From assembly GCA_002269645.1 (NCBI GenBank), contig NIVC01000762.1:224638-288637 (forward strand): DNA of 64,000 bases, given 5' to 3'. The position numbers and the translations under genes were made by a program. This document shows positions 1 to 46,059 of this stretch, in pieces. Position 1 is the stretch's first letter; each line of letters begins with the position of its first letter. Below the pieces are notes generated by a model that saw only the letters and a list, made by a program, of their open reading frames with translations, did not search any database and had not been told where the DNA came from. The stretch is from Macrostomum lignano (Eukaryota).

Positions 1-1113
1 AAGACAGCCGCCTCGAGACAGCTCGAACTGGAAGCCGCACTTTGGACACGAGCTGCCCCGACTCTCCAGGAACTGCGCCAGTCCGCGCTCGCTCAAGTCC
101 GTCTGCTGACGCCACTCGCCGAACTGCTGGCAGCTCACGCCTCGGTGCCGCTCGTGCCACGCCTTGCCGCACTTCCTGCACGTCTCCTTGCCGCAGTGCG
201 GGCACCGCACCTGCCTGTCGTGGTGCTCCGACACCTCGAAACCGTTCGAGCACCCGCTGCACCAGCAGAAGTTGTCCGTCAGCTTCAGTCGCCAGTCGCG
301 CAGTCTCTCATCCAGCTTCTTCATCACTACGGGCTTCAGCTTGCCCGCCAGCAACCTCTGCAGCAGCGGAAAGTACTCGCACGACGTGTCCGTCAGAGCT
401 CGGTCGTCCAGCTTGTCGCACACCGGACACGTCAGCACCGACACCGAGCTGTCGTGCATCAGGCGCACCTCGATCTGCTGGCACAGACAGTCGCTGCAGA
501 CCTCGCAGCCGCACAGGGGAACCTCGACCAGCTTCTTCTCGTCGATGCACACCGGGCACTCTTTGCTAGCAGTAGTTTCCGTTGGAGATGCTTTAGAGTT
601 TCGAATAGAAATCGCTCTGAGCGGTCGAATTTGATCCCACTGCAGCACACCTTCAGTAGCCCTGTGAGTAGGGTAAAACGGCTCCAAACTCCTAGTGAAA
701 ATGTCATCCGCTTCTACAGCACCCGTGTCCTGCTCTTCTGCTAGGCGTCTTCGGAGACCCGAGGAGCTGCTTGTCTCGCTCATCCGTGTTTTTGAAAATC
801 GCTGAAACATATCTCTGAAAGGTTCGGCTGCTGCATCCGTTTTGGGGTCTCGCAAGCTCCACGAATCACAGGCTGCATCGTCAAAACGTTGCCTGTGGTG
901 CTGATTTTTACGAGACTTTGGCTTGGGTGCCCGTTCAAGATGCTGTGCTCTCTGCTGTCGCTGGTGCAGATCCAGAAGCTCCTCACAAGAGACTGACTTG
1001 GAACACACGCTGCAGATAATGCGAATTTTAGGATTGGAAGTGTCGCACGTAGCCGAGTTGATAAATGTGCAGTGCTGGCACTGCCACTCAATGTTTTGGC
1101 TAGCTGATGCCAT
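1..1113 (-). CDS. HOIP/RNF31-like RBR ligase paralog 1 (NZF-like + RING1-IBR-start of RING2), truncated by the window edge
   Basis: ATG at 1113 (MASASQNIEWQCQHCTFIN...). The frame stays open to base 1 and ends ...ELSRGGCL, with the catalytic Cys codon at 4-6. Nearly identical to 5716-6830. Confidence 0.85.
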   Translation of the reverse strand, partial: MASASQNIEWQCQHCTFINSATCDTSNPKIRIICSVCSKSVSCEELLDLHQRQQRAQHLERAPKPKSRKNQHHRQRFDDAACDSWSLRDPKTDAAAEPFRDMFQRFSKTRMSETSSSSGLRRRLAEEQDTGAVEADDIFTRSLEPFYPTHRATEGVLQWDQIRPLRAISIRNSKASPTETTASKECPVCIDEKKLVEVPLCGCEVCSDCLCQQIEVRLMHDSSVSVLTCPVCDKLDDRALTDTSCEYFPLLQRLLAGKLKPVVMKKLDERLRDWRLKLTDNFCWCSGCSNGFEVSEHHDRQVRCPHCGKETCRKCGKAWHERHRGVSCQQFGEWRQQTDLSERGLAQFLESRGSSCPKCGFQFELSRGGCL

Positions 1114-3110
1114 GCGATTTGGTGCTGCAAGCTTGCAAACCTTTGCTGCAAGGAGTTTATTTAAACAAAATTTAGTCAACTTTGAACTAAAAGGATAATC
1201 AGTTTGAGAAAACAATGTTGGAAAGCTTGCAATATAAATTTTTAAAACTTAGGAGGAACTCAAGAATATCATAGTAATGTAATATAATATAGGTAAATAG
1301 TATCCTATACTACTCATGTTAGATATATATCATAAGAGCGATTAGATTATGTATATTTTGTCAATAAACACCCGCCCCATATGCTCTTTTAGTAGTAAAA
1401 GTAGCGCTTTCAGCTGTTATCTAATTCAATAGAGAGTGGCATATCTAGTGACTTTAGCAGCTCGTAGTAGTACCAGTGGCCTCTACCATTAGCTAAATAT
1501 TTTCGTTAACTTTACTATGTAAAACTTATAAAGAAAAAAACGATTTGAGACTTGCAATGCAATGCGAAGGCAATTTAAATCTCAAAAGTATATTTTATAA
1601 AAATATTTTAAGCCATCTTGTTAAAAATACCGCTGTTGACTTAAAAAAATCAATTATTGTAGCAAAATATGAACTAGGATAAAAATAATTGGACAATAAA
1701 TTTGATTGGCCTAATTTGGAAACTTTTAAGAAACGTATCAACAGTGAGCATACCGGTATACAGGTACACACTTAAGGTGGAAACTTATGAAGGCGAAGAC
1801 ATAATTCTAATTCTAGACAAATTGGATTTTGAAAAAAACTTTAAACAAATCAAGAATTTAATACTAAAATCATTAAGGCTGATTAACATTATCATAGAAT
1901 GAGCAATCAAGTCGCACTATCGATGTAAAAAGGAATGAAAGCTGCTGTAGGAGTTACGAGCGTAACCACACGAAATTGGACCTTTATTTGATTTGATGTC
2001 AGTGTAAACAACACTTTACCTCTTTTGACGAACACACTTAAGAAAACTTTATTTACTAGCAGTCGAAAAATAGTGTCACGAAAATTTCCTACAAACAACT
2101 GCGTGTAGTGACGATTGAAAGTTTTCAAAATACACTACAAATCGATTGAGCATCAATTGATTGCTTGTTTAAGCTAATTCATTTTACTGCCATTATTCAT
2201 AGAACAAGCTTAAAATCAACTAATTGTCTACGCAGTAAATTGACTCAAATGTAATTAACTGTGTACCTGCAAATGTCATGCGACACAAAAAAGAAAGGAC
2301 ATCAAAACAACGAGAAACAAATACAAAATGGAAATATATAATAAAAATACTAAACGATGCTTTTTACACGTGCTTTCTTTGATTTCTTTCTAGCAAGCAG
2401 TTTCTGCCTACACTGCTCACTTTGGCAAGTGGCTTTTATCTACTTGTCGAAACTTGTCTCTGACAATGCTCTTAGTGCTTGAGCAGCTAGAATGCATTGT
2501 GCGCTGAAACTTACAAGAAAATATTTTTTAATTAAGACAAAAATTCGGCCGCAAGTGACGCCCGCCCCTCGGCCCTCGCCCATACAGCGAAGACGGGGTG
2601 AAAGGCCCCTGGCTAGAGGAAGGGGCAGATAAAACGCACGCAAAGTACTCGTACACAGAGTGCACAAAGCTGTCCCAGAGAGAGCAAAGTGACTCATAAT
2701 AAAACACACATATGCTTTGCCTACGGTAGTGTAATCAAAACACTTCCTCGAGAAACCTACACCACCACCTATCGATCAAAAAAGTAAGTGACAATGCGCT
2801 AGTATGCAAAATTAAAGTATACAAGGGCTATAAACAGAGAAAAAGTAAAAAACCATCAACGATTCATCACTTGCATAAAATCAAAAAGAGTCAGAAGTTA
2901 TTGAACATAGGAAACTTACAAAACTTCTCAAAAAAATCAGCAAAATACATGTTGTTTTAACAAAATTATGAAACATTTTAAAACAATAACTTGAACACAT
3001 ACTCGAAACGAGCATTTCAGATTTTGTAACATGGCAATTTAAAATCAAACGTTAAAGCCGCGAAGGAACGAATAGCTCGACTAACTGTTTTGTTCATCAA
3101 CGTTCTACAT

Positions 3111-4835
3111 TTACACCAAAACTTCTTTCTCTTTGCTACCCAACAGCGGTGGCACCATTTTTTTTAGCCGGTCGCGGTAAACTCTCATCTTCTCTCTTGC
3201 AGCAAAAGCAGGGTTGGAGGCGTTGACTTTCGGCAGGGCCAAACCAAACCTTCTGAACATCTCCAGCAGCTCATTCTCACTGGCAACATCTACTAAATCA
3301 AGCGCGTTTGCATTGATGAGCTGAATTAGATACTCACGGTAGTGCCTGTCGCATATACCCGGCTTGTTATGAGAAACTTTTTCGGTACAAGGATATATAC
3401 CAATCAACTTTCGTTCTATCTTCAAATCAGGAAGCTCACAAGCTTTGTTAACTTTTGAGCATGCTTCGCTTACTTTAATCTTATTTCTCCTCAACAAATC
3501 AAGTAGAGTCGTCTGTTTTACTTGCTTCAAATAAAAGTAGCACTGGCGCTGGTGGTGCACATGAATTCCTTTAATTTGGCAGCCTTCGTGAGGTCTCAAC
3601 TGAGGGCTTCGACAAAATGGACAGAATGAATGCCCACATCTGCAGTGAAACACAGGAACTCCAGATTTGGACACTCGTTGGTAGCAAAGAATGCAGACTG
3701 GGCAAACCAAATCAAAAGTCAGAAGCTCCATCATCTGATCGTGCAGGTTTGCGTCAGTAGGCGAGAAGCCTTGCTTTTGAGCAGCTATGTGCATTTCGTT
3801 ATAATCTCCTTTTTGTTGAATACCTGCTGCATAATCCCGATAACTGCTGCAGCCCATCCGATAGTGATCAACCCAGAACCCGAAGCATTTCTTGCAGGCA
3901 TTCCGTTTGCAAACTTTGCAGTAACTTTCGCACTGCCGAGTGTCCATTTTCGGTAGTCCACCATTCCTATGAGGACAATAACCATTCGAAGTGTTTAATG
4001 GAACTGTCGAGGCATCTTTAGAGGCTTTTGATTTTGTCCCTTTCTTTCCTGCGGCTTCGACCACTTCCCAACCTTCGTCGCTATTTTTGCTTGAATTTTC
4101 TTCAAGGTGCACCACTGCATACTCCACAGTGTCAGAGCCAAGCAAATCCGCCATTTCCATCAGCTGCATCCTCATGAAATCCCGACTGTCTTCATCATCG
4201 CACACATCCTTGCAGACAGGGCACTGAATTCTGCTGCTTTTCAGCTCAAGAAGAAATTTCCGAAAACACTCTGGACACATTTGGCACTCGCATGCTGCCA
4301 TGGCAACAAGTTTGTGACGCGGTAAATCATTCGAACAGCGGCTGCACTTGCGACGCAATTGGCTCAGCAGAGCATCGTCTTCGAACGCTAGGACACCACA
4401 CGACTCAATCGCAACTGCAAGGTCTGATTCGGAAAACTCGTTAAACTTGGGCATGCTTTTGACAGCCAGAACTCTCTCTGCTACCCAGTCTTCCACTCTG
4501 AGCTGCAAAGCCAGGTTTTGAGCTCTATCGGACCATTCGATAGAATCGCTTCCTGCTGCTCCGACTGCAGCACTGGCGGCTGATGTGGCTGCGGAGGTCA
4601 GCATGGACGCAGCAGCAGCGGCTTCACTGCGAGCGACTGCGCCTCCTTTAGTGGTTCCACCACTGAGTTCGGTAGTCTGTGCGCAAGCAGAGCAAATTCC
4701 AAGCCCAGTTTCTGGCTGCGATGGAGCCGGGTTCACCAGCGTGCAGTGATTGCAGACCCAGCTACCGTTGCTTTGAGAATTGTTTTCTTGGAAATTTTGA
4801 GAGGTTACATTTGAAGGAACATTTGTTGCATGATG
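3111..4835 (-). CDS. HOIP-like paralog 2, 3' part: NZF-like + degenerate catalytically dead RBR-LDD (type C), in frame with 4836-6830 across a TGA
   Basis: Open for 574 codons directly after the TGA at 4836-4838. RING1 reads CSRC..MAACECQMCPEC..CPVC. RING2 reads CPVC..SKSGVPVFHCRC..FCPFC..HVHH..C and lacks the GGC-x-H motif. LDD-like GICDRHYREYLIQLIN. Confidence 0.75.
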   Translation of the reverse strand, partial: HHATNVPSNVTSQNFQENNSQSNGSWVCNHCTLVNPAPSQPETGLGICSACAQTTELSGGTTKGGAVARSEAAAAASMLTSAATSAASAAVGAAGSDSIEWSDRAQNLALQLRVEDWVAERVLAVKSMPKFNEFSESDLAVAIESCGVLAFEDDALLSQLRRKCSRCSNDLPRHKLVAMAACECQMCPECFRKFLLELKSSRIQCPVCKDVCDDEDSRDFMRMQLMEMADLLGSDTVEYAVVHLEENSSKNSDEGWEVVEAAGKKGTKSKASKDASTVPLNTSNGYCPHRNGGLPKMDTRQCESYCKVCKRNACKKCFGFWVDHYRMGCSSYRDYAAGIQQKGDYNEMHIAAQKQGFSPTDANLHDQMMELLTFDLVCPVCILCYQRVSKSGVPVFHCRCGHSFCPFCRSPQLRPHEGCQIKGIHVHHQRQCYFYLKQVKQTTLLDLLRRNKIKVSEACSKVNKACELPDLKIERKLIGIYPCTEKVSHNKPGICDRHYREYLIQLINANALDLVDVASENELLEMFRRFGLALPKVNASNPAFAAREKMRVYRDRLKKMVPPLLGSKEKEVLV

Positions 4836-6830
4836 TCAATGTAGTTGCCGATTCTGTTCTTTCTTCTGTTGCTCTCTCAGCTGTTGCTCTCTCTGCTGTT
4901 GCTCTCTCTGCTGTTGCTCTCTCTGCTGTTGCTCTCTCTGCTGTTGCTCTCTCTGCTGTTGCTCTCTCTGCTGTTGCTCTCTCTGCTGTTGCTCTCTCTG
5001 CTGTTGCTCTCTCTGCTGTTTCTCTCTCAGCTGTCGCTCTCTCAGCTGTTGCTCTCTCAGCTGTTGCTCTCTCTGCTGTTGCTCTCTCTGCTGTTGCTCT
5101 CTCTGCTGTTGCTCTCTCTGATGTTGCTCTCTCTGCTGTTTCTCTCTCAGCTGTCGCTCTCTCAGCTGTTGCTCTCTCTGCTGTTGCTCTCTCTGCTGTT
5201 GCTCTCTCTGCTGCTGCTCTCTCTGCTGCTGCTCTCTCTGCTGTTCAGCCCGCTGTGGATTCATCTGCTGCTCAAAAAAATCATTTGCTTTATCTTGACC
5301 TTCAATTTTACCTCGCTGAGTCAAGAGCAAAAACAAATTCTGCTGCTCTCTCAGCGTCTTCTTGTTGCCATGCATGGCGCTGGCCAGGGCCTCCTTGAGG
5401 TGCGACTCGCACAGACCCGACTCGACCACCGGCCTCCCGCACTCCCCGTCCTCCAAACCGCCTCCTGACGTCTCCTTCTGCTCCTGGACGCTGCACCGAC
5501 CTACAGCGCCCGCCACTCCGACAAGCTCCAGCTGAACGCCCCGCTCCAGCGCCGCCTGCCGAACCTTCTCCAACGGCCAGTCTCTGAACGTCTCCACGCA
5601 CTCCGACCCGTGGTGGCAGTGGAGTCCCTTGTTCCCGCCGCAGCACTCCTGTCGAACAAACAGACTGCCGCAGTCGCTGCAGAACTCCGCCTTGCACTGC
5701 CTGCACGTCAGGTGAAGACAGCCGCCTCGAGACAGCTCGAACTGGAAGCCGCACTTTGGACACGAGCTGCCCCGACTCTCCAGGAACTGCGCCAGTCCGC
5801 GCTCGCTCAAGTCCGTCTGCTGACGCCACTCGCCGAACTGCTGGCAGCTCACGCCTCGGTGCCGCTCGTGCCACGCCTTGCCGCACTTCCTGCACGTCTC
5901 CTTGCCGCAGTGCGGGCACCGCACCTGCCTGTCGTGGTGCTCCGACACCTCGAAACCGTTCGAGCACCCGCTGCACCAGCAGAAGTTGTCCGTCAGCTTC
6001 AGTCGCCAGTCGCGCAGTCTCTCATCCAGCTTCTTCATCACTGCGGGCTTCAGCTGGCCCGCCAGCAACCTCTGCAGCAGCGGAAAGTACTCGCACGACG
6101 TGTCCGTCAGAGCTCGGTCGTCCAGCTTGTCGCACACCGGACACGTCAGCACCGACACCGAGCTGTCGTGCATCAGGCGCACCTCGATCTGCTGGCACAG
6201 ACAGTCGCTGCAGACCTCGCAGTCGCACAGGGGAACCTCGACCAGCTTCTTGTCGTCGATGCACACTGGGCACTCTTTGCTAGCAGTAGTTTCCATTGGA
6301 GCTGCTTTAGAGTTTCGAATAGAAATAGCTCTGAGCGGTCGAATTTGATCCCACTGCAGCACACCTTCAGTAGCCCTGTGAGTAGGGTAAAACGGCTTCG
6401 AACTCCTAGTGAAAATGTCATTCGCTTCTACAGCACCTGGGTCCCGCTCTTCGCCTATGCATCTTCGAAGACCCAATGTGCTGCTTGTCTCGCTCATCCG
6501 GGTCCTCGAAAATCGCTGAGACATACTAATGCTCAAAGGTTCGGCTGCTGCATCCGTTTCGGCGTCTCGCAAACTCCACGAAGCACGGGATTCATCGTCA
6601 AAGCTTTGCCTGTGCTGTTGGTTTTTACGAGGCTTTGGCTTGGGTGCCCGTTCAAGATGCTGTGCTCTCTGTTGTCGCTGGTGCAGATCCAGAAGCTCCT
6701 CACAAGAGACTGACTTGGAACACACGCTGCAGATAATGCGACTTTTAGGATTAGAAGTGTCGCATACAGACGAGTTAATAAATGTGCAGTGCTGGCACTG
6801 CCACTCAATGTTTTCACTAGCTGATGCCAT
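4836..6830 (-). CDS. HOIP-like paralog 2, 5' part: NZF-like, RING1-IBR-RING2-LDD (cassette A), Gln/Arg/Glu repeat linker; ends at an in-frame TGA
   Basis: 664-aa ORF with WQCQHCTFIN, CPVC..CDCEVCSDC, FCWCSGC..CPHCGKETCRKC, CPKC..GGCLHLTCRQC..FCSDC..CC..HCHH..C, FRDW, RCSVQEQKE..DGECG..LCESH. These match the HOIP RBR-LDD motif order. Confidence 0.88.
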   Translation of the reverse strand: MASASENIEWQCQHCTFINSSVCDTSNPKSRIICSVCSKSVSCEELLDLHQRQQRAQHLERAPKPKPRKNQQHRQSFDDESRASWSLRDAETDAAAEPLSISMSQRFSRTRMSETSSTLGLRRCIGEERDPGAVEANDIFTRSSKPFYPTHRATEGVLQWDQIRPLRAISIRNSKAAPMETTASKECPVCIDDKKLVEVPLCDCEVCSDCLCQQIEVRLMHDSSVSVLTCPVCDKLDDRALTDTSCEYFPLLQRLLAGQLKPAVMKKLDERLRDWRLKLTDNFCWCSGCSNGFEVSEHHDRQVRCPHCGKETCRKCGKAWHERHRGVSCQQFGEWRQQTDLSERGLAQFLESRGSSCPKCGFQFELSRGGCLHLTCRQCKAEFCSDCGSLFVRQECCGGNKGLHCHHGSECVETFRDWPLEKVRQAALERGVQLELVGVAGAVGRCSVQEQKETSGGGLEDGECGRPVVESGLCESHLKEALASAMHGNKKTLREQQNLFLLLTQRGKIEGQDKANDFFEQQMNPQRAEQQREQQQREQQQREQQQREQQQREQQLRERQLREKQQREQHQREQQQREQQQREQQQREQQLREQQLRERQLREKQQREQQQREQQQREQQQREQQQREQQQREQQQREQQQREQQQREQQLREQQKKEQNRQLH
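4860..5245 (-). repeat. Coding 15-bp tandem repeat (QREQQ) linker in paralog 2
   Basis: (ctgttgctctctctg)n on the + strand, about 25 units. Confidence 0.9.
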
Positions 6831-16497: not shown

Positions 16498-16532
<35 letters not shown>

Positions 16533-21405: not shown

Positions 21406-21955
21406 TACTATACCCTCTAATAGACCTGCTCAGAGATAGCTAACCGAACTACTCTGATTTTAACATTTAAAGAATAAATCATCCCCCTCCATACACCAGA
21501 CCGAACTACTGGTTCGCCCAGACAGCAGACCTTTAGAGCGATTTCAAAATCATCGAAAGCATCTTACTTGAAGCCTTCCCCTTGTATCAACATCTTACTT
21601 TGCAAGTTAACATCAATGTGATTAAAACCATTGATTACATCAGACTGTAGGTAAACCCCCCTTGCGTGATCGCATCAACAGGAAAAGTCAGTCAGTCGAA
21701 TCCAACGCCTCGGTTTTTTGGTTCGAATACTCGTAATAGAAATAAAATCATAAACAGAGCCACAGTAGTTAGAGTCCCAAACTCTAATCCAAACAAACAG
21801 AAACTCGAACTGCCATTCAGTTGAACCAATAAAAATTCACCTCAGTAAAGTTATCCAACTTGTTATTAAATAAAAAAAACAAATCTGCTTCGAGTCTCAA
21901 TATCTTGTCTGAATAGACGATTTCAACTGAAACCTAACCAGTCATTGCAACAAAA

Positions 21956-22345: not shown

Positions 22346-22431
22346 CTGGATAGGGGAATTTATTCGTCAAGACGTTAGCGACATCTCTTTACTACGTGCA
22401 AAGACAAAATATACCTTCTAGAATAGCTTAC

Positions 22432-23541
22432 TGAGGTTTGCTTTCGCCTTGAAGATGCGACGTTAGCAACGCCTACACGGGGCTTCTTGTTGTCGCCACG
22501 CATGGCGCTGGCCAGGGCCTCTTTGAGGTGCGACTCGCACAGACCCGCCTCGACCACCGGCCTTCCGCACTTCCCGTCCTCCAGACCGCCTCCTGACGTC
22601 TCCTTCTGCTCCTGGACGCTGCACCGACCTCCAGCGCCCGCCACTCCGACAAGCTCCAGCTGAACGCCCCGCTCCAGCGCCGTCTGCCGAACCTTCTCCA
22701 ACGGCCAGTCTCTGAACGTCTCCACGCACTCCGACCCGTGGTGGCAGTGCAGTCCCTTGTTCCCGCCGCAGCACTCCTGTCGAACAAACAGACTGCCGCA
22801 GTCGCTGCAGAACTCCGCCTTGCACTGCCTGCACGTCAGGTGAAGACAGCCGCCTCGAGACAGCTCGAACTGGAAGCCGCACTTTGGACACGAGCTGCCC
22901 CGACTCTCCAGGAACTGCGCCAGTCCGCGCTCGCTCAAGTCCGTCTGCTGACGCCACTCGCCGAACTGCTGGCAGCTCACGCCTCGGTGCCGCTCGTGCC
23001 ACGCCTTGCCGCACTTCCTGCACGTCTCCTTGCCGCAGTGCGGGCACCGCACCTGCCTGTCGTGGTGCTCCGACACCTCGAAACCGTTCGAGCACCCGCT
23101 GCACCAGCAGAAGTTGTCCGTCAGCTTCAGTCGCCAGTCGCGCAGTCTCTCATCCAGCTTCTTCATCACTGCGGGCTTCAGCTGGCCCGCCAGCAGCCTC
23201 CGAAGCAGCGGAAAGTACTCGCACGAAGTGTCCGTCAGAGCTCGGTCGTCCAGCTCGTCGCACACCGGACACGTCAGCACCGACACCGAGCTGTCGTTCA
23301 TCAGGCGCACCTCGATCTGCTGGCACAGACAGTCGCTGCAGACCTCGCAGCCGCACAGGGGAACTTCGACCAGCTTCTTCTCGTCGGTGCACACCGGGCA
23401 CTCTGCTGATGTCTGCAGCTCTGAGAGGTCAGTGGACTTTCCGCACACTGAGCAGATCAGCCTTCTGTGCAGTTGGCGACCCTGTGCTCCATCATTGATG
23501 AAGGTACAGTGCGGACACTGCCACTGCGATCGGCGTGGCAT
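22432..23541 (-). CDS. HOIP-like paralog 5, exon 1: NZF-like + RBR-LDD cassette A
   Basis: ATG at 23541 (MPRRSQWQCPHCTFIN). Intact GGCLHL and FRDW. Phase-0 donor TCA|GTAAGC at 22431. Confidence 0.82.
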
Positions 23542-25053: not shown

Positions 25054-27504
25054 TTAATTCTGTTGTTGATAGTGGTAAGATTTTAGATTCTGTTGAGTCG
25101 CATTTATTGGCTGAAACGGGCTCGTGAACTGCTGCATTCTTGAGTTCATGCTCTGCATTGGCGGTACTGGTGAGTTCATGCTCTGCATTGGCGGTACTGG
25201 TGAGTTCATGCTCTGCATTGGCGGTACTGGTGAGTTCATGCTCTGCATTGGCGGTACTGGTGAGTTCATGCTCTGCATTGGCGGTACTGGTGAGTTCATG
25301 CTCTGCATTGGCGGTACTGGTGAGTTCATGCTCTGCATTGGCTGCATTGGCTGCATTGAGTTCATGCTCTGCATTGGCTGCATTGAGTTCATGCTCTGCA
25401 TTGGCTGCATTGAGTTCATGCTCTGCATTGGCTGCATTGAGTTCATGCTCTGCATTGGCTGCATTGAGTTCATGCTCTGCATTGGCTGCATTGAGTTCAT
25501 GCTCTGCATTGGCTGCATTGAGTTCATGCTCTGCATTGGCTGCATTGAGTTCATGCTCTGCATTGGCTGCATTGAGTTCATGCTCTGCATTGGCTGCATT
25601 GAGTTCATGCTCTGCATTGGCTGCATTGAGTTCATGCTCTGCATTGGCTGCATTGAGTTCATGCTCTGCATTGGCTGCATTGAGTTCATGCTCTGCATTG
25701 GCTGCATTGAGTTCATGCTCTGCATTGGCTGCATTGAGTTCATGCTCTGCATTGGCTGCATTGAGTTCATGCTCTGCATTGGCTGCATTGAGTTCATGCT
25801 CTGCATTGGCTGCATTGAGTTCATGCTCTGCATTGGCTGCATTGAGTTCATGCTCTGCATTGGCTGCATTGAGTTCATGCTCTGCATTGGCGGTCTGTAA
25901 TGCGACGGTCTCAAGCTCTGATTCGGCAGCAGAGGCGGTGGAGGCCGAGCGAACCAGTTTGTCACAGAATGCATGGAAGTCCTGACTGCCTGCAACGCTG
26001 TTGTGCCACCTCCAGGCCTTTGATTCGAGGTCGCAGAAGCGGCAGCTGCTGGTGAGTCGCACATCTCACAGCTGGCAGGCGAACCGGATTCAACGTTGAC
26101 CGGCGAGTTGACATTGTGGCACAAGCTGCAGATCCACGGCTGCTGCGGAGCGGCCTCCTGCGGCGTAGAAGTCGGCAGTAACGGCGGAGGCAGGCGCGTC
26201 ATCATTTCGATGAGCATCGGAGTGAGCTTGAACTCCACTGGACTGGATGCGGCAGGGGCGGCGGCGGCGGTGACTGCCTGCTTGACTTTCCTGCCACGCA
26301 TGGCGCTGGCCAGGGCCTCCTTGAGGTGCGACTCGCACAGACCCGACTCGACCACCGGCCTCCCGCACTCCCCGTCCTCCAAACCGCCCCCTGTCGTCTC
26401 CTTCTGCTCCTGGACGCTGCACCGACCTACAGCGCCCGCCACTCCGACAAGCTCCAGCTCAACGCCCCGATCCAGCGCCGTCTGCCGAACCTTCTCCAAC
26501 GGCCAGTCTCTGAACGTCTCCACGCACTCCGACCCATGGTGGCAGTGGAGTCCCTTGTTCCCGCCGCAGCACTCCTGTCGAACAAACAGACTGCCGCAGT
26601 CGCTGCAGAACTCCGCCTTGCACTGCCTGCACGTAAGGTGAAGACAGCCGCCTCGAGACAGCTCGAACTGGAAGCCGCACTTTGGACACGAGCCGCCCCG
26701 ACTCTCCAGGAACTGCGCCAGTCCGCGCTCGCTCAAGTCCGTCTGCTGACGCCACTCGCCGAACTGCTGGCAGCTCACGCCTCGGTGCCGCTCGTGCCAC
26801 GCCATGCCGCACTTCCTGCACGTCTCCTTGCCGCAGTGCGGACACCGGATCGCCAACTCCTCGACGTTGTCGTCAACTTCAAAGCCGAAAGCGCAGCCGC
26901 TGCACCACATGAAGTTGCGACTTCGCTCCAGACGCCAGTCGCGCAGTCTGTCGTCGAGCTGCTGCATCAGGTCGCGGCTGAGCCGGCCCGCTAGCAGACT
27001 CCGCAGCTGGGGAAAGTACTCACAGCCGGGATCGGCCAGGGTGTCCGAATCTGGCCGGCTGCAAACCGGACAAGCAAGCCGGTCAGCCGAGCCGTGACTG
27101 CGCAAGCTGACTCGGACGAATCTACACAGACAGTCGCTGCAGAGCCGACAGCCGCACAGAGGGACTGTCAGAAGTGCCAGCTGCGACTCCAGGCACAGCG
27201 GGCAGTCGCCACAGTCGGAGTAATCGGCAACCGCAGTCGGTGCAGCGTGGGGAACGCCAACGGGCTCGCTAGATTTGCCGCAGACTTCGCAGATGAGTCG
27301 ACCAGAACCGGCGGTGCGACGCGTCTCAGCCAGCTGATTCTCGTAGGTGCAGTGACGGCAGCGCCAAGTGGCAGCGCTGCTGCTGTTCTTCTTGACAGTT
27401 GCCTTGTTTTTATGGCTTTTTTGTTTTTGTTTTTCATTCTGATGCAGCACGAATGAAGCTGAATGATTGCCTCTACGTTTGGAGCTGTTGCCGCTCGATG
27501 TGGC
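25054..27504 (-). CDS. HOIP-like paralog 6: NZF-like, divergent RING1, IBR-RING2-LDD cassette A, NZF, then a PMQSMNSMQ tandem-repeat tail
   Basis: 798-aa ORF (GTG at 27450) with no ATG before the first NZF. It is open back to the acceptor ttttttccag| at 27505, implying an unlocated upstream exon. Catalytic GGCLHL is intact. Confidence 0.8.
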   Translation of the reverse strand, partial: ATSSGNSSKRRGNHSASFVLHQNEKQKQKSHKNKATVKKNSSSAATWRCRHCTYENQLAETRRTAGSGRLICEVCGKSSEPVGVPHAAPTAVADYSDCGDCPLCLESQLALLTVPLCGCRLCSDCLCRFVRVSLRSHGSADRLACPVCSRPDSDTLADPGCEYFPQLRSLLAGRLSRDLMQQLDDRLRDWRLERSRNFMWCSGCAFGFEVDDNVEELAIRCPHCGKETCRKCGMAWHERHRGVSCQQFGEWRQQTDLSERGLAQFLESRGGSCPKCGFQFELSRGGCLHLTCRQCKAEFCSDCGSLFVRQECCGGNKGLHCHHGSECVETFRDWPLEKVRQTALDRGVELELVGVAGAVGRCSVQEQKETTGGGLEDGECGRPVVESGLCESHLKEALASAMRGRKVKQAVTAAAAPAASSPVEFKLTPMLIEMMTRLPPPLLPTSTPQEAAPQQPWICSLCHNVNSPVNVESGSPASCEMCDSPAAAASATSNQRPGGGTTALQAVRTSMHSVTNWFARPPPPLLPNQSLRPSHYRPPMQSMNSMQPMQSMNSMQPMQSMNSMQPMQSMNSMQPMQSMNSMQPMQSMNSMQPMQSMNSMQPMQSMNSMQPMQSMNSMQPMQSMNSMQPMQSMNSMQPMQSMNSMQPMQSMNSMQPMQSMNSMQPMQSMNSMQPMQSMNSMQPMQSMNSMQPMQSMNSMQPMQSMNSMQPMQSMNSMQPMQPMQSMNSPVPPMQSMNSPVPPMQSMNSPVPPMQSMNSPVPPMQSMNSPVPPMQSMNSPVPPMQSMNSRMQQFTSPFQPINATQQNLKSYHYQQQN
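25141..25890 (-). repeat. Coding tandem repeats in paralog 6: 27-bp (PMQSMNSMQ) x ~20 and 30-bp (PMQSMNSPVP) x ~6
   Basis: (tgagttcatgctctgcattggctgcat)n and (tgagttcatgctctgcattggcggtactgg)n on the + strand. Confidence 0.93.
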
Positions 27505-29145
27505 CTGGAAAAAAGTACGCGATACAGTCCTTAGTTAGGATTACGGCTTGAAATGGTAGCTAGGCACTAGACTATTTGCGGTTTAAGTTTTGGTCTAACT
27601 GCAAAATCGTTTCTATGACGGTAGGTAACTTACAGGATTTTTTACTTCTTAAACCAAAAAATTAGAATAAATATAAACACGAGACTTCCTAACATGCTAC
27701 AGGTGTTATTAATTTCGATTGTAGCACATCGTTAGTAAACTACTAAGAAAGCGGCAAGGCTCTTTTTAAATATCATCAATAAGGCACTGGATAAGTAGTT
27801 TCAGAGGTACGAGTATATAGCGATCAGAGACTTGCACAATATCATGCTAAAATTACCTTGCAACTGCTCGTAGATTGATTCTTTCTCGCATGCATTTCGC
27901 TGTCTTACGTTCATAAGTGATGCAATAAATGAGAGTCTCTCTCAGAACACCAGCCTTGTCTGAAAAAATGTCATTAACACTGTTTATTATTCATTTCCAA
28001 TTGTCAAGTGGACGTCAATTTAAAGACCTATCATTTTTTACATACGAGATTGTGTAAGCCTGACTAACCTAGCTCTTATTTAACTAATCAATCTCTGCAA
28101 CTACTAATCAAATCCAAAGCCACTAAAATTTAAGTTTAAGAACATATCTGAGTCTGCGGTTTGAGCTACGATAAAGACACTTGACTTTCTGTACACACGT
28201 CGTACGAGTTGCATTGGCAAAGTAGATAAAAAATAAAATATTTAAATGGCAAATCATAAGCATAATATTTGGCTTCATTATTTATTTGTTGAAAATCACC
28301 CCAGCTAGATAATAAGCTGGTATATCTGAATAACAAAATAAATCAGGCGAAACATGAAAATAGATACGATCTTAAACACTGAAGAACAGGGGACAGCACT
28401 TATGTAAAATACCAGTGGAGCATTTTAAAAAGAAATTCAGTTGAATGAAAAACAGCCAATACCACTGGTATAAAGCATCGAAACTAGTATGGTGGAAAGT
28501 TCGGTTTAATCAGAGTACAAAGACGACAGAGTAGCACGAAAATTGGTTAATAACTTTTATCATAGTCTCAAATGGCAATAAAATCTTGATAAAATAACAA
28601 AATGTGGACAATTTGGAACAACTAAAAATTTAAGCACGATGAAATGGACCACTTATAGCAAGCTACTGTAAAAATTCAAAACTTCTAGAGTAATTATACG
28701 AACACGCCAACTGATTTATAAAAAGGCGTTGTTTAGACAGGTTGATTATAATTTGCTACGGTTTAAAATTTCCAGTTCAAAAAGTTTCCTTGGATAATCA
28801 AATTAAATATTGAAACATCAAATATTAACAAAAACATTAATTCAATTCACAGAACCGGGAATTATATTGACGATTTGGTTCTAATCTAACAGACAAAAAA
28901 TCTTAGGTTAGTGTCCAGATTTTACGCTTGTATTAATTAGACCTTGACTCATTTGTGCCGTTGATTAGGGTTATAAGGGTGTGAAAAACATACAGTTCAA
29001 GGTCTTTAAAACCATACTCGTCGATTAGTGAGGATGTTCAGATTTAAACTAACACTACTCGAAACTTCATTTAATTCATAGTAATTCTATTCACAAAAAT
29101 GTCTGATCGGAAAGTAGGGAGTGTAGATAGAACCGTCGTGACGAG

Positions 29146-32100
29146 TCACTTCACAAGTGGCTTCTGCTGAGCAATCAAAGCTCGCAGGGTTGCCACGTTG
29201 TTCTCGCCGACTCCCGAGCAGTCAATTCGTTCACGCAGACACGCTCCCCTGAGCTCGCCTTCGTCCATCACACTGACGGGATCCAGCTTTTGCTTGTTCA
29301 CCAGCGATACAAGGTACTCAATGTAGTGCTTCTCGCACAGGTTCGCCTGGCCCGGTTTAACGTCGACACCGCACGGCTCATCCTTCAAACTGCTTCCAAC
29401 TTCCTTTTGCTCCATCACTTCGCATTTGTCAACTGGGTTCTCAGCTTCGCTCTCGAACTCCACCTTGTGTAAATGCAGCAGCTGCTGGAGCCGGTCCACT
29501 CCAAAGTCTCTAAGGTAGAAGAGACAGTCTCTCGGGTGTTTGCAACCCCCAAGGCCTCTGCCTTGAATGATTGTATACTCGCCGTCACAGCCTGCGCAGA
29601 ATTGAAAGCGGCACATTCGGCAGGTAAAGTGCAGACAACCACCCTTTGCTAGGGCGTACTGGAAGCCACAATTAGGACATTCAATGCCATTGGCTTGTAG
29701 AAAAAATCCAACACCTTTCTCCTGATATTCTGGATCATTGTCCATCAGCCACTTCCCAAACTGGTCGCAGTCAATGCCCTCATGCTGATCTTTCCACGGC
29801 TTTTTGCACTCTTTGCAGGTAAAGGCCTTGCAAATAGGACATTGGAACTTCAAACCGAACATGATTTCTCCGAGAACCATTCCAAAGCCACAAATGCTGT
29901 TGCTGCACCAGCGAAAGTTTGGATCTCGAATAAGATTCCACTCTGTGATCTTTTGCTCCACAATCTCAACAACGTTTTCATCAAATGTATATTCAGATTG
30001 TTGAAGGCCTTGTATCTGTTTGATCTGTGGCAGAAGAATTCCAAAATGGCTTTCCAGCTCCTCTATTTGATTTGCATTGGGAAATTGGCACATTGGGCAA
30101 TGAAGATCTGTGACATGCCCGCCACCTGTCATAGTTGTTGTTACGAAGTTACGGAAGCACTCATGGCACAACTCGCACTGGCATGAAGCCATTGGCAATA
30201 ACTTGTGCTTCGGAAACTCTCCAGTACAGATACTGCACTCGCACTGCAAGAAACTTTTCACGAAGTCGACGTAATCGCACCTGTTATTGCTGCTCTTTGC
30301 AGCCTCCGCAAGATCATGAAGATCGCAGCCCTTGAACTCACTGTTTTTCATAAGCTGAAAAAGTGTTTGTGCATCGCTAATCTTTCTTAAGTCGAACTCT
30401 CCCATCAGACAGTGGAGGGAGGCCTCACTTCCATTCATTCTGTCGAACTTAGGTGGCTCCTGGCCCTCCTTGCAGAACAAAAATTGTGCGAAATCTCTAA
30501 AGACCCGTTCGTTTTCGGCTTGATAAAAATTAGTAAAATCACCATCGCCCTGAAAATCAAGGTTTACCTCATGGGCTGACTGCAGCAACTCTGGGCAGTT
30601 CTCCGCAATCCAAGCGACCTTTGCTTTGTGACGTTGGGCGCACAGCTGAATAGCCGCTTCAAGGTCGCATGTGTTGTCCAGCACAGCAGATGCGACATCG
30701 TCAAATGAGGGTCGCACACCTGCATTATCATCCTGCAACACTTTCGCTACCTCGCAACCGACCTGCTCAATCAGTGCCGGCCATTTTTCTGCCACCCAGG
30801 CCTTGAATCTAGCCTCCGACTGGGCGCCATCATCAGCAGTTGCCACCAAATACAGCTGGCCCAACCGACCATCGAAGCCTGAAAATTCGATATCTTGTAT
30901 AAGCTTCAACAGCTGTCTGTTTGCAGCCTCCTCCATCTCTGGATTTCGCTGACGGGCTACTGGCTTGACTTCAAAGGGAAGCTTGATACCGTCACTGCCA
31001 CCGAGTTCGCGTGGAGTTTGGCAAATTGCGCAAGACTTTGCAGTAATGGGATTAAACATTGTGCATGCCGAGCAAGACCAATCTTGGTCATTGGACAGCG
31101 GCTCTTGTTTAGGCTTCAGTGGTGCGCGATCTGGAATCTCCACCTGCTTTGGAGCTTCTGGCTGTTTTATTGCTGGCTCCTGCTGCTGTTTTTTGACTTT
31201 TGCAATAATTTCCTTATCGTCGCAAGTCATCGAACAAACTGAGCATATGACGCGGCTACTTTTTATTAGCTTCGTCTCGGCTATAGGATTTAGCGCCGTA
31301 CAAACGGGGCAAGGCCAACTGTTCGCTTCCGTTGGTTCGGTAGGCACCGGCCTTGGAGGCAACTGCTGCTGCGGAGGGGGTGGAGCTGTCTCAGGTTTCG
31401 GCACAATTGATTTAGACAGACGTGGCTTGGGCTTCGGTATCGATTGTGGCTGCTGAGGCGGTTGCGGAGCTGGCAGCGATGGCTGCGGAGGCAGCTGATC
31501 TGAGCAGTCAAAAAACTCTTCTTCAGGCGTCGGCGGTCGACGAATGTCGCCAGCTGGCTTCGAAAAGCTGCGCTCCTCGCTAATAGGCTTTAACGACATC
31601 ATGAACTCATTGAGTTTCATTACACGGGCATCTGACTCGCTGGTATCGCTAGGCTGCTGTCGCGGTGGCTGTCGCGGTGGCTGCTGTGGCTGTTGTTGAG
31701 GTAAAACATATCGCGGTTTTTGTCCAGGATACTGCGGCGGTGGAACCCTCGGAGGCGGCACAGCAACAGCAGGTGCAGCAGCAGCAGCAGCAGCAACAGG
31801 CGCAGGTTGCTGCTGCTGTTGAGCTAGATTTGGACTATTATTACCCATGAGACCAATTTGAGACTTATAACTAACCGCTTGACTGTTTGACACAACCTTT
31901 CTAACTCCAGAGTTCAACTGCACACTGGCAGGTCCCACCACGCCCGGTGGCACCAACCGCACAGCGTTGGATCCGACGGCGTCGCTGATTTTACGTCGAT
32001 TATGACTGCGCCGGTCCGGATGCCCGTGCCAGCGTCCGTCGCAACTCTCGCACAGGCGCCGCTTGGAGCAGTGCTTCTCCTGGCAGGCCACCGTTGCCGC

Positions 32101-32712
32101 GGCCTCGCCGCACAGGTCGCAATTCTGGTTGAGCTTGCGCTGCATTGCGTTTACTCTATCCTGCATCCCGGAGGGTCCGGCACGCTTAAGAGCTGGCTGT
32201 TCGTTCTTGGCGATAAGCTTAGTACCCAACGGATGGTTATCCTTAATGATGAGGCTCAGCTCTTCAGCCAGCAGGTACAAGTCTACAAGAGTATCAGCAA
32301 GGGCTTCGTTCGACAATCGTTCAGATGTAATGGTGAAATTCTGATCGTTGCGCTCGAAACCAATGCGTTCTAATAGTTGGTCAACGCCCGAGAGGCACTG
32401 GCAGAATGAGGCCTGCACCCTGTGCCAATCCGGTGGTCGGTCTCTCTCTGGACGCAGCAGGTGCTTGAGCTTGTTGCGCAGAAATAAACAGGACCGCTTG
32501 ACGTCTTCGGCTGATTTTTTGTCACCCGACATGGCGGCGCGAGCATCCACTAGCTTGTACTTTTGGTTGATCTGCATTTGCAGCAGTTCGCCATAGTCTA
32601 GCTGGCGACTATCTCGGATGGCCTCAAGCAGATTAGATCTGGCATTGCGAACTGAAACATCGCCAAGACCTCCGGAGTTCGGAATCGGGGGCAACGGCCT
32701 CGATTGGGCCAT
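29146..32712 (-). CDS. RNF31: Full-length HOIP (RNF31), catalytic subunit of LUBAC; intronless ORF
   Basis: 1188 aa with a PUB-like N-terminus (RPPDWHRV..LLERIGF..TLVDLYLLAEEL), B-box (LCESCDGRWHGHPDRRSH), two NZFs and a UBA region. RING1, IBR, RING2 GGCLHF, HPRDCLFYLRD and LDD EQKEV..DEPCG..LCEKHY.EYLVSLVN are closely colinear with human HOIP motifs. Confidence 0.93.
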   Translation of the reverse strand: MAQSRPLPPIPNSGGLGDVSVRNARSNLLEAIRDSRQLDYGELLQMQINQKYKLVDARAAMSGDKKSAEDVKRSCLFLRNKLKHLLRPERDRPPDWHRVQASFCQCLSGVDQLLERIGFERNDQNFTITSERLSNEALADTLVDLYLLAEELSLIIKDNHPLGTKLIAKNEQPALKRAGPSGMQDRVNAMQRKLNQNCDLCGEAAATVACQEKHCSKRRLCESCDGRWHGHPDRRSHNRRKISDAVGSNAVRLVPPGVVGPASVQLNSGVRKVVSNSQAVSYKSQIGLMGNNSPNLAQQQQQPAPVAAAAAAAPAVAVPPPRVPPPQYPGQKPRYVLPQQQPQQPPRQPPRQQPSDTSESDARVMKLNEFMMSLKPISEERSFSKPAGDIRRPPTPEEEFFDCSDQLPPQPSLPAPQPPQQPQSIPKPKPRLSKSIVPKPETAPPPPQQQLPPRPVPTEPTEANSWPCPVCTALNPIAETKLIKSSRVICSVCSMTCDDKEIIAKVKKQQQEPAIKQPEAPKQVEIPDRAPLKPKQEPLSNDQDWSCSACTMFNPITAKSCAICQTPRELGGSDGIKLPFEVKPVARQRNPEMEEAANRQLLKLIQDIEFSGFDGRLGQLYLVATADDGAQSEARFKAWVAEKWPALIEQVGCEVAKVLQDDNAGVRPSFDDVASAVLDNTCDLEAAIQLCAQRHKAKVAWIAENCPELLQSAHEVNLDFQGDGDFTNFYQAENERVFRDFAQFLFCKEGQEPPKFDRMNGSEASLHCLMGEFDLRKISDAQTLFQLMKNSEFKGCDLHDLAEAAKSSNNRCDYVDFVKSFLQCECSICTGEFPKHKLLPMASCQCELCHECFRNFVTTTMTGGGHVTDLHCPMCQFPNANQIEELESHFGILLPQIKQIQGLQQSEYTFDENVVEIVEQKITEWNLIRDPNFRWCSNSICGFGMVLGEIMFGLKFQCPICKAFTCKECKKPWKDQHEGIDCDQFGKWLMDNDPEYQEKGVGFFLQANGIECPNCGFQYALAKGGCLHFTCRMCRFQFCAGCDGEYTIIQGRGLGGCKHPRDCLFYLRDFGVDRLQQLLHLHKVEFESEAENPVDKCEVMEQKEVGSSLKDEPCGVDVKPGQANLCEKHYIEYLVSLVNKQKLDPVSVMDEGELRGACLRERIDCSGVGENNVATLRALIAQQKPLVK

Positions 32713-38673: not shown

Positions 38674-42116
<3,443 letters not shown>

Positions 42117-46049: not shown

Positions 46050-46059
46050 GTGAGTCAAA

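What the first reader, a model, noticed from the sequence alone, without database searches (positions are those of the whole stretch)
1..32712. Tandem array of seven HOIP/RNF31 paralogs with shuffled modules: a diversified linear-ubiquitin ligase repertoire
Seen: seven same-strand genes carry eight RING2-containing RBR units, plus an orphan RING1, built from a few modules (NZF, RBR-LDD types A/B/C, QRE linker, filamin repeat, tandem-repeat tail) beside one canonical HOIP. Known: HOIP is typically single-copy in animals and is the recognised Met1-linked ubiquitin chain ligase in immune and cell-death signalling. Inference: this looks like birth-and-death expansion of the kind seen for immune genes, applied to the LUBAC catalytic subunit.
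Basis: partly seen in the sequence, partly recalled or inferred. Interest (0 to 1): 0.88.

Follow-up and report, generated by a model that had tools for sequence, protein, structure and literature searches.

The report
Tandem HOIP ligase gene cluster, flatworm
A flatworm (Macrostomum lignano) carries a real tandem cluster of about a dozen copies of the linear-ubiquitin ligase HOIP, a gene that is single-copy in the animals checked; the copies are reshuffled by recombination in coding repeats, and only some still look able to work as enzymes.

Summary
The minus strand of window 1-32712 carries eight RING2-containing HOIP-type RBR-LDD units, one orphan RING1 and a ninth unit cut by the window edge.

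The window is Macrostomum lignano, assembly Mlig_3_7, contig NIVC01000762.1:224638-288637. The array runs about 11 kb past the window start, giving at least 11 units in about 44 kb.

Every unit matches human HOIP far better than any other RBR ligase. All except type B group with the species' own HOIP, though with only 57% bootstrap support.

"Diversified ligase repertoire" is only partly right.
- Five units keep all catalytic and zinc residues: the full-length HOIP and four short type A/A' units.
- Three have lost the catalytic cysteine: type B (Val), its frameshifted pseudogene copy, and the second unit of the double-RBR gene (TGT>TCT, Ser).
- The type A catalytic cores are homogenised between copies. 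What varies is the set of attached modules.
- Breakpoints against a homeologous contig lie inside the Gln/Arg/Glu-coding tandem repeats. The four window-specific extra units carry most of the defects.
- Even the "canonical" HOIP lacks the ZF1 zinc-finger ligands kept in about 98% of other HOIPs.

An immune role and Met1-linkage activity are untested. I found no paper describing this cluster.

The parts
29146..32712 (-). G8: full-length HOIP/RNF31 orthologue. It is a 1188-aa single exon. Domains: B-box-like zinc finger about 31993-32121; NZF1 31234-31317; NZF2 31021-31080; UBA_HOIP about 30601-30825; RBR-LDD about 29233-30240. Catalytic Cys/His and R935/D936 are present. The ZF1 ligands C911, C916, H923 and H925 are absent.
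   Evidence: A transcriptome-guided gene model (1184 aa) exists on the contig.
25054..27895 (-). G7: type A' gene of 829 aa in two exons (27857-27895 and 25054-27504, GT-AG intron). Order of modules: NZF (27280-27366), RBR-LDD with the C-terminal helices missing (26284-27174), second NZF (26059-26136), then a PMQSMNS tail encoded by a 27-bp tandem repeat (25342-25891).
   Evidence: dN/dS against the homeologues is 0.30-0.32.
20700..23541 (-). G6: type A gene in three exons (22432-23541, 21961-22345, 20700-20782). Order of modules: NZF (23443-23523), RBR-LDD with the C-terminal helices missing (22480-23403), then a weak filamin/Ig-like exon.
   Evidence: P0173 is the annotated product on this contig. 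The orthologue P0003 matches contig 110 at 100% with the same exon structure.
17534..19627 (-). ORF with the orphan RING1, about 697 aa from its ATG. Order of modules: B-box-like zinc finger (about 19505-19600), RING1 (19166-19432), QRE repeats (18303-19028), NZF (18116-18193), QRE repeats, then an in-frame TGA at 17534-17536. It is the 5' half of a gene that is one intact 1188-aa ORF (ZnF-RING1-QRE-NZF-RBR(B)-LDD) on contig 110.
   Evidence: No gene model is called here on this contig.
14665..17533 (-). Decayed continuation of the previous part. It holds two more NZF-QRE repeats (NZF 17381-17458 and 16247-16324), a second in-frame TGA at 16400-16402, and a type B RBR-LDD pseudogene (14665-16369) with at least four frame changes, one internal stop and a lost IBR cysteine.
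   Evidence: Only the last 243-aa ORF is annotated.
8979..12296 (-). G4: double-RBR chimera, an intact 1105-aa ORF. Order of modules: NZF (12186-12269), type A RBR-LDD (10815-11747), QRE, NZF (10377-10454), then a type C RBR-LDD copied from the 3' end of HOIP (8982-10196). In the C unit the catalytic Cys is Ser (TCT at 9465-9467) and G900 is Asp.
   Evidence: The same Ser appears in the merged UniRef model P0174. No transcriptome-guided model exists on this contig.
4836..6830 (-). G3: type A gene of 664 aa. Order of modules: NZF (6720-6803), RBR-LDD with the C-terminal helices missing (5361-6275), then a QRE tail encoded by a 15-bp repeat (4858-5245). It ends at an in-frame TGA (4836-4838).
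3111..4835 (-). G2: type B unit in the same frame directly after the TGA of G3, 574 codons open. Order of modules: NZF (4683-4760), then RBR(B)-LDD (3267-4481). Substitutions are C885V, H887V, R935K, D936Q and IBR C802R. The LDD is full length, including its C-terminal helices. The first ATG is at 4604.
   Evidence: It is 91% identical at DNA level to the B unit of contig 110. dN/dS is 0.46.
1..1113 (-). G1: type A gene cut by the window edge. The ATG is at 1113, the NZF at 1003-1086 and RING1-IBR at 1-561. On the contig it continues into a C-terminal NZF.
4858..5245 (.). One of the QRE-coding tandem-repeat arrays. The others are at 16425-17154, 17559-17889 and 18303-19028. The rearrangement breakpoints against contig 110 (window about 5243 and about 18435) fall inside these arrays.

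Best explanation
This is a lineage-specific tandem cluster of HOIP (RNF31/LUBEL) family genes in Macrostomum lignano. It grows and is rearranged by unequal recombination and segmental duplication. The Gln/Arg/Glu-coding tandem repeats and the near-identical type A cores serve as recombination substrates, so modules (NZF, B-box zinc finger, RING1, QRE coiled-coil linker, RBR-LDD of several types) are joined in new orders.

The products fall into three classes.

1. Probably active ligases. These are the full-length HOIP and the short NZF-RBR-LDD type A/A' proteins. Both keep every zinc ligand, Cys885, His887 and Arg935/Asp936. Type A lacks the UBA region through which HOIL-1L and SHARPIN activate human HOIP, and the human RBR-LDD fragment is active on its own. 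Type A proteins are therefore predicted to be constitutively active and to be targeted by their NZF and variable C-terminal modules (inferred).

2. Catalytically dead RBR-LDD proteins (type B). These are transcribed elsewhere in the genome and keep long ORFs, NZFs and a full LDD. They are best read as ubiquitin- or E2-binding pseudo-ligases or regulators (inferred).

3. Young recombinant copies that are decaying. These are the type B pseudogene, the C885S second unit of the double-RBR gene, and the TGA-interrupted A-B fusion.

What is shown: family membership, copy structure, residue status, homogenisation of the type A core, and breakpoints inside repeats. What is inferred: enzymatic activity, Met1 linkage specificity and biological role.
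For: Identity and locus
- The window equals NIVC01000762.1:224638-288637 of Mlig_3_7 (100% over 6504 nt).
- It is colinear at 93-96% with contig 110 and at about 86-98% with contig 691 of the same assembly.

Family
- PF18091 (LDD), IBR and UBA_HOIP are found.
- Human HOIP is the best solved relative. Type A scores 3e-53 against 1e-4 for ARIH2. Type B scores 7e-22 with no other RBR ligase listed.
- The AF2 model of the type A RING2-LDD finds only HOIP RING2-LDD structures (E 4e-9) before RNF216 (E 0.1).
- In a library of 1.84 billion representatives, type A has no relative above about 45% identity outside its own cluster.
- NJ tree: A+A' 100% bootstrap; canonical+C+E 99%; adding D and P0078 88%; all non-B units together 57%.

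Residues
- See the table and the codon check.

Recombination
- The window has about 13 kb extra relative to contig 110, lying between 18435 and 5243. Both ends sit inside QRE repeat arrays.
- On contig 110 the B-box ZnF, RING1, QRE, NZF and RBR(B)-LDD form one intact 1188-aa ORF.
- The identical 'CAT TGA CAT' junction occurs in three of five copies.

Homogenisation
- Between G3 and G4, dS is 0.029 in the core against 0.166 in the N-terminal linker. Type A cores are 97-98% identical at DNA level while their flanks are about 85%.

Constraint
- dN/dS is 0.10-0.33 for HOIP, A', A6 and ZnF-RING1; 0.46 for B; 0.47-0.71 for A3/A4.

Expression
- The contig annotation is transcriptome-guided (PMC5730564). 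It calls HOIP, G7, G6, D and B-type genes (P0176-P0178).

Function background
- The human RBR-LDD fragment alone is active (PMC3463842).
- ZF1 and the helical base are both needed to position the acceptor ubiquitin (PMC5413910).
Against: - No biochemical or expression data specific to these copies were available.
- Type A lacks the last roughly 55 residues of the LDD, the C-terminal helices. The canonical group lacks ZF1. Met1 specificity is therefore uncertain for both.
- Pairwise dN/dS below 1 does not prove present function for young copies.
- Gene models in this region are partly chimeric: the 730-aa and 494-aa models join different type A copies. Transcript support for individual paralogues is therefore ambiguous.
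- The type A structure model is of low confidence (pLDDT 63).
- Type B is unplaced in the tree because of its long branch.
Confidence: 0.75

Rival explanations
1. One reading: an adaptively diversified, immune-type repertoire of linear-ubiquitin ligases, maintained by birth-and-death evolution under pathogen pressure.
For: - Copy number and architecture differ between homeologous contigs: about 11 units here, 7 on contig 110, and another arrangement on contig 691.
- Pseudogenes sit beside intact copies.
- Old, divergent RBR-LDD types D and E are still under purifying selection, with dN/dS 0.12-0.14 and saturated dS.
- HOIP acts in innate immune signalling in other animals (PMC5413910, PMC12154395).
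Against: - The type A catalytic cores are homogenised rather than diversified.
- No pairwise dN/dS exceeds 1.
- Three of the eight units lack the catalytic Cys.
- No infection or expression data exist. These genes do not appear in the stored supplementary tables of two M. lignano expression papers.
- The genome is generally rich in duplications (PMC5730564).
Confidence: 0.2
2. Mostly genomic debris. Only the full-length HOIP, and perhaps one or two old paralogues, are functional. The rest are non-functional by-products of repeat-driven rearrangement in a neopolyploid genome.
For: - The four window-specific extra units are where most of the defects are: the type B pseudogene, C885S in G4, and a TGA between G3 and G2.
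- There is no transcript model for G4 or for the ZnF-RING1 ORF.
- dN/dS is relaxed at 0.47-0.71 for A3/A4.
Against: - Type A, A', B and D units are conserved as long intact ORFs on three contigs, with dN/dS 0.27-0.46.
- Transcriptome-guided models exist for them.
- A' and A diverged long ago (dS about 0.31) yet both keep every catalytic and zinc residue.
Confidence: 0.15
3. Assembly artefact: uncollapsed haplotypes or mis-joined repeats inflate the copy number.
For: Mlig_3_7 has 180 Mb of duplicated blocks at 95% identity or more (PMC5730564). Three contigs carry versions of the locus.
Against: - Redundancy between contigs cannot create tandem copies within one contig.
- The tandem copies differ by 2-30% and have different flanks and architectures.
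- A merged UniRef/MetaClust gene model, P0174, which is absent from the NCBI annotation, runs through G6, ZnF-RING1, the type B pseudogene, G4, G3 and G2 in the same order. It carries window-specific substitutions, including GGSLHFTC.
Confidence: 0.04

Closest known systems
Human HOIP / RNF31, the catalytic subunit of LUBAC
   Same: - The same RING1-IBR-RING2-LDD catalytic module (5EDV E=4e-76 for the full-length gene; 3e-53 for type A).
- Catalytic Cys885/His887, acceptor-contact Arg935/Asp936 and the ZF2 ligands are conserved.
- NZF fingers, a B-box-like zinc finger and the UBA_HOIP domain are present in the 1188-aa gene.
   Different: - About 11 units in tandem instead of one gene.
- The full-length gene and types C, D and E lack the ZF1 ligands.
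- Type A lacks the UBA/PUB region and the last LDD helices.
- Type B lacks the catalytic residues.
- There are a double-RBR gene and an orphan RING1.
- No Pfam PUB hit was obtained.
- Partners (HOIL-1L, SHARPIN) were not examined.
Drosophila LUBEL (CG11321) and shrimp PvLUBEL
   Same: These are invertebrate HOIP orthologues with B-box, NZF, UBA and RBR-LDD domains. LUBEL makes linear chains in vitro (PMC5090701, PMC5413910, PMC12154395). The module vocabulary is similar.
   Different: LUBEL is one very long gene (2892 aa). Here there are many short genes carrying subsets of the modules, together with dead units.
ARI-1 (HHARI) family expansion in Caenorhabditis
   Same: It is a precedent for a recent lineage-specific expansion of one RBR subfamily (PMC6288150).
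   Different: It involves a different RBR subfamily. No LDD and no module shuffling through coding repeats are described there. I read only the abstract.
Ephydatia muelleri HOIP-like protein KAL5514972.1 (P0006)
   Same: It is another HOIP-family protein with internally repeated RBR parts: five RING1-IBR repeats before one RING2.
   Different: The repeats lie within one predicted protein of a sponge, not in an array of separate genes. It was not examined further and could be a gene-model artefact.

Membership tests
HOIP / RNF31 (LDD-bearing RBR ligases) | RING1-IBR-RING2 zinc-ligand pattern | tested here: met
   All of the conserved Cys/His columns listed for RING1, IBR and RING2 are kept in the canonical, A, A' and C units, and in types D and E on the homeologous contigs. 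Type B keeps all but IBR C802 (Arg). The unit at 19166-19432 has RING1 only.
HOIP / RNF31 (LDD-bearing RBR ligases) | LDD domain (Pfam PF18091), which is exclusive to HOIP | tested here: met
   PF18091 scores above its gathering score of 23 bits: canonical 93, G4 110, G2 (B) 40, the 243-aa ORF of the type B pseudogene 36, G6 30, G7 27. In type A only profile positions 26-75 of 92 match. G3 was not reported at E<0.01.
HOIP / RNF31 (LDD-bearing RBR ligases) | Catalytic Cys885 and general-base His887 in RING2 | tested here: inconclusive
   Met in the canonical unit, A (G3, G4 unit 1, G6) and A' (G7). Not met in type B (Val/Val; Ser or Tyr at position 885 in other contigs), in the type B pseudogene, or in G4 unit 2 (Ser885, His kept). 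The result therefore depends on the unit.
HOIP / RNF31 (LDD-bearing RBR ligases) | ZF1 zinc finger inserted in RING2-LDD (C911, C916, H923, H925), needed to position the acceptor ubiquitin | tested here: inconclusive
   The ligands are present in A and A', and largely in B. They are absent, together with a 9-residue deletion, in the canonical unit, C, D, E and P0078. C911, H923 and H925 are conserved in 98-99% of about 130 other HOIP representatives; C916 fell below the 80% filter in that alignment (role of ZF1 from PMC5413910).
HOIP / RNF31 (LDD-bearing RBR ligases) | Acceptor-ubiquitin contact Arg935/Asp936 and ZF2 (C969, C986, C998, H1001) | tested here: met
   Kept in all units, except that type B has Lys/Gln at 935/936. 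ZF2 is kept everywhere. That R935 and D936 contact the acceptor ubiquitin is recalled from Stieglitz et al. 2013, which I did not re-read here.
HOIP / RNF31 (LDD-bearing RBR ligases) | Complete helical base of the LDD (to about human residue 1072) | tested here: not met
   This applies to type A and A' only. Homology ends at about human residue 1013, after which unrelated linkers follow. The canonical unit and types B, C, D and E have the C-terminal helices.
HOIP / RNF31 (LDD-bearing RBR ligases) | Closest relatives are HOIPs rather than other RBR subfamilies | tested here: met
   PDB phmmer, Foldseek and the representative search all point to HOIP. The named representatives looked up are RNF31 or uncharacterised proteins. 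No outgroup-rooted tree could be built.
HOIP / RNF31 (LDD-bearing RBR ligases) | Synthesis of Met1-linked ubiquitin chains | not testable with these tools
   This needs an in vitro assay.
LUBAC complex | UBA domain that binds the HOIL-1L/SHARPIN UBL; PUB domain that binds OTULIN/SPATA2 | tested here: inconclusive
   UBA_HOIP (PF16678) is found only in the 1188-aa gene (28.8 bits, gathering score 22.4) and in P0002. No PUB hit was obtained at E<0.01. The presence of HOIL-1L and SHARPIN in M. lignano was not tested.

The most novel reading that the evidence does not exclude
The dead RBR-LDD proteins (type B, and perhaps the C885S unit), which keep NZFs, a long coiled-coil and a full LDD, may be dedicated non-catalytic partners or regulators of the active type A and HOIP ligases. 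That would be a LUBAC-like machine built entirely from HOIP paralogues. The complementary losses (ZF1 in the full-length gene, the C-terminal helical base in type A) might then be compensated within hetero-oligomers.
Probability: 0.1. Interest if true: 0.8.

Novelty: new variant of a known kind. Interest (0 to 1): 0.55.

Why it matters
HOIP is the only ligase known to make Met1-linked ubiquitin chains, and it has been studied as a single gene. A genome with about a dozen natural variants amounts to a natural mutagenesis series of the RBR-LDD.

The variants include:
- short UBA-less forms;
- forms without ZF1;
- forms without the C-terminal LDD helices;
- naturally Cys-less forms that are still transcribed;
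- a double-RBR fusion.

M. lignano can be manipulated by RNAi and transgenesis. It could therefore be used to ask which LDD elements are really needed for linear-chain specificity, and what pseudo-HOIPs do.

The cluster is also a clear example of coding low-complexity repeats acting as recombination hot spots that shuffle domains. The caveat is that the species is a neopolyploid full of duplications, and no functional data exist.

Tried and rejected
- Filamin exon. The structure prediction had pLDDT 48.6, and its Foldseek hits were meaningless. The filamin call therefore stays weak.
- Exact look-ups of the window ORFs (HOIP, G4, G3) found nothing on record. Context came instead from the annotated products P0173, P0175 and the 243-aa ORF.
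- First homology search. The full HOIP query was swamped by low-complexity words and returned only two hits.
- 730-aa gene model. I tried to decide whether the model starting at G3 reads through the TGA into G2. It does not. It is a chimeric model that ends in G1 beyond the window edge.
- Recoding of the TGA. I considered selenocysteine or read-through at the shared TGA. There is no evidence for it, and the sense codons GGA, GAA and GGG at the same site in other copies point to a simple nonsense mutation that was then copied.
- Polycistron idea. I considered that G3-G2 might be a transcript resolved by spliced-leader trans-splicing, which is known in this species (PMC5730564). This was not tested.
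- Placement of type B. Its grouping with fish RNF31 in the NJ tree was rejected as long-branch attraction (53% and lower support).
- Literature. Searches for RNF31 with Macrostomum, and for the Mlig gene identifiers, found nothing, including in the supplementary tables of two papers.

Full report
**What is in the window**

The long ORFs of window 1-32712 all lie on the minus strand. A tblastn search with the window's own HOIP RBR-LDD finds ten matching places, all on that strand and none beyond 32712:
- a type A unit cut by the window edge (1-561);
- type B (3267-4481);
- type A (5361-6275);
- type C (8982-10196), 88% identical to the canonical unit;
- type A (10815-11747);
- a broken type B (14812-15932);
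- a lone RING1 (19166-19432);
- type A (22480-23403);
- type A' (26284-27174);
- the canonical unit (29149-30372).

Pfam reports IBR, IBR_1 and the HOIP-specific LDD domain PF18091 above threshold. It reports UBA_HOIP only in the 1188-aa gene. Thirteen NZF motifs lie on the minus strand between 1003 and 31317, and none elsewhere.

The 'QRE linker' is encoded by 15-bp and 42-bp tandem repeats. The 'tail' is encoded by a perfect 27-bp repeat.

The 'filamin repeat' is a separate exon of the gene at 20700-23541. It is only weakly supported: Pfam E=0.0068, below the gathering score, and PDB filamin-A E=0.024.

**Where it comes from**

The window is the last 64 kb of contig NIVC01000762.1 (288,637 bp) of the Macrostomum lignano assembly Mlig_3_7, GCA_002269645.1. 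A locus fetched from that contig overlaps the window at 100% over 6504 nt.

The array goes on to the left of the window. It continues with:
- the rest of gene G1 (type A plus a C-terminal NZF);
- a type D RBR-LDD gene (533 aa, 52% identical to the canonical unit);
- a 1011-aa gene with B-box, NZF, QRE, NZF and type B modules.

That makes at least 11 RING2 units in about 44 kb.

Two other contigs of the same assembly carry colinear versions of the locus: contig 110 at 93-96% identity and contig 691 at about 86-98%. This fits the documented redundancy of this neopolyploid line (PMC5730564).

A merged UniRef/MetaClust gene model, P0174 (2624 aa), is not in the NCBI annotation. It runs through G6, ZnF-RING1, the type B pseudogene, G4, G3 and G2 in the window's order. 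It also carries window-specific substitutions. The copy structure therefore does not depend on one annotation, and probably not on one assembly.

**Are they HOIPs?**

- Full-length gene: it matches human HOIP RBR-LDD (5EDV) at 4e-76.
- Type A: it matches at 3e-53, with the next RBR ligase (ARIH2) at 1e-4.
- Type B: it matches at 7e-22, with no other RBR ligase listed.
- Structure: an AF2 model of the type A RING2-LDD (pLDDT 63, low) retrieves thirteen HOIP RING2-LDD structures (E down to 4e-9) before RNF216 (E 0.1).
- Wider search: a search of 1.84 billion representatives with type A gives 137 proteins below 1e-30. Those I looked up are RNF31 or uncharacterised proteins from animals. Nothing outside type A's own cluster exceeds about 45% identity.
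- Tree: in an NJ tree with 100 bootstraps, A and A' form a clade (100%). Canonical, C and E form another (99%). D and a further M. lignano protein (P0078) join it (88%). All of these together are recovered at 57%. Type B is a long branch of uncertain position.

I could not root the tree with other RBR families.

**Which units could work?**

I aligned the units with about 130 HOIP representatives and numbered the columns on human HOIP.

- Types A and A' keep every conserved zinc ligand, Cys885, His887, Arg935/Asp936 and the ZF1 ligands. Their LDD stops at about human residue 1013, so the C-terminal helices are missing.
- The full-length gene, with types C, D, E and P0078, keeps the catalytic residues and the full helical base. 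It has lost the ZF1 ligands C911, C916, H923 and H925 through a 9-residue deletion. Three of these ligands (C911, H923, H925) are conserved in 98-99% of the other HOIPs. ZF1 and the helical base are both reported as necessary to position the acceptor ubiquitin (PMC5413910).
- Type B has Val (Ser or Tyr in other copies) at position 885, Val at 887 and Lys/Gln at 935/936. It keeps a full LDD.
- The C unit of the double-RBR gene G4 has TGT>TCT (Cys885Ser) and G900D.
- The second type B copy (14665-16369) has at least four frame changes and an internal stop.

In total, five of the eight units look catalytically competent and three do not.

**How the array is built**

On contig 110 the B-box zinc finger, RING1, QRE, NZF and RBR(B)-LDD form one intact 1188-aa ORF. 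In the window the 5' half of that gene (19627-18435) and its best-matching 3' half (5243-3111, 91%) are separated by about 13 kb. That stretch holds the type B pseudogene, G4 (A-QRE-NZF-C) and G3 (A-QRE). Both breakpoints fall inside QRE-coding tandem repeats.

The C unit is a copy of the 3' end of HOIP. It is closer to the contig 110 HOIP (93% DNA identity) than to the window's own HOIP.

The junction between QRE and NZF carries the same in-frame TGA (CAT TGA CAT) in three of the five window copies, and sense codons in the others and on contig 110. One nonsense mutation was therefore copied along with the segment.

Type A cores are 97-98% identical at DNA level, while their flanks are about 85%. 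Between G3 and G4, dS is 0.029 in the core against 0.166 in the N-terminal linker. This indicates gene conversion or very recent exchange.

Contig 691 shows yet another arrangement. It has a HOIP whose N-terminus is 95% identical but whose RBR-LDD is only 58% identical, with saturated dS. It also has an A-QRE fusion to a longer piece of HOIP.

**Constraint and expression**

Pairwise dN/dS against the homeologues:
- HOIP: 0.22-0.33
- A': 0.30-0.32
- A of G6: 0.27
- ZnF-RING1: 0.10
- B: 0.46
- A of G3/G4: 0.47-0.71
- old types D and E against the canonical unit: 0.12-0.14

None exceeds 1.

The assembly's gene models are transcriptome-guided (PMC5730564). On this contig they include HOIP, G7 (829 aa, two exons; I verified the GT-AG intron), G6 (three exons), the last ORF of the type B pseudogene, a chimeric type A model, D, and the 1011-aa B-type gene. 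There is no model for G4 or for the ZnF-RING1 ORF. B-type genes have models on the other contigs.

**Reading**

The locus is a real, lineage-specific tandem expansion of the HOIP family. It evolves by repeat-mediated unequal recombination with concerted evolution of the type A core.

It contains likely active ligases, transcribed pseudo-ligases and decaying recent copies. The copies specific to this contig carry most of the defects. That is a birth-and-death pattern, but there is no sign that the catalytic cores are being diversified.

Nothing here tests an immune role or Met1 specificity.

HOIP is single-copy in Aplysia (PMC9334734). An expansion of another RBR subfamily is known in Caenorhabditis (PMC6288150). 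I found no paper on RNF31 in Macrostomum.

I rate it a new variant of a known kind, of moderate interest.

Noticed in passing
window 29146-32712 (RING2-LDD about 29500-29700): The 'canonical' M. lignano HOIP and its close paralogues (C, D, E, P0078) lack the ZF1 zinc-finger ligands C911, C916, H923 and H925. Three of these (C911, H923, H925) are conserved in 98-99% of other HOIP representatives. The short type A paralogues keep them.
   Followed up: partly
L003 10001-13543 (NIVC01000691.1), protein P0002: The homeologous HOIP has an N-terminal 780 aa that is 95% identical to the window's gene, but an RBR-LDD only 58% identical with saturated dS. The catalytic module has apparently been replaced inside an otherwise conserved gene.
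   Followed up: partly
window 38674-42116: A 3.4-kb (TTAG)n microsatellite with about 860 copies. It accounts for the extreme GC skew and low GC content there.
   Followed up: no
window 35176-36918 (-): A 580-aa ORF with reverse transcriptase and RNase H domains, that is, a retroelement fragment just beyond the HOIP gene.
   Followed up: no
window 46487-47956 (+): An ORF with C2H2 zinc fingers. It overlaps a 10-bp tandem repeat (46059-46744) and antisense ORFs.
   Followed up: no
window 13015-13368: A perfect 20-bp tandem repeat (17.7 copies, 100% matches) in the spacer between G4 and the type B pseudogene.
   Followed up: no
window 24254-24530 and 59024-59350: A dispersed repeat of about 300 bp (78% identity) that is also present near the array on contigs 110 and 691.
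   Followed up: no
protein P0006 (Ephydatia muelleri KAL5514972.1): A sponge HOIP-like protein with five tandem RING1-IBR repeats before a single RING2. It is either another case of internal RBR duplication or a gene-model artefact.
   Followed up: no
L002 10001-21167 and window 6860 to beyond the window start: The annotated gene models P0004 (494 aa) and the 730-aa product are chimeras that join exons of different type A copies 6-11 kb apart. The likely cause is that transcripts of near-identical copies cannot be placed uniquely.
   Followed up: partly
window 42704-43465, 43977-44339, 48553-49118, 51368-51972, 53052-54005, 59654-60110: The right half of the window is dense in micro- and minisatellites. 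The window ends at the end of the contig.
   Followed up: no
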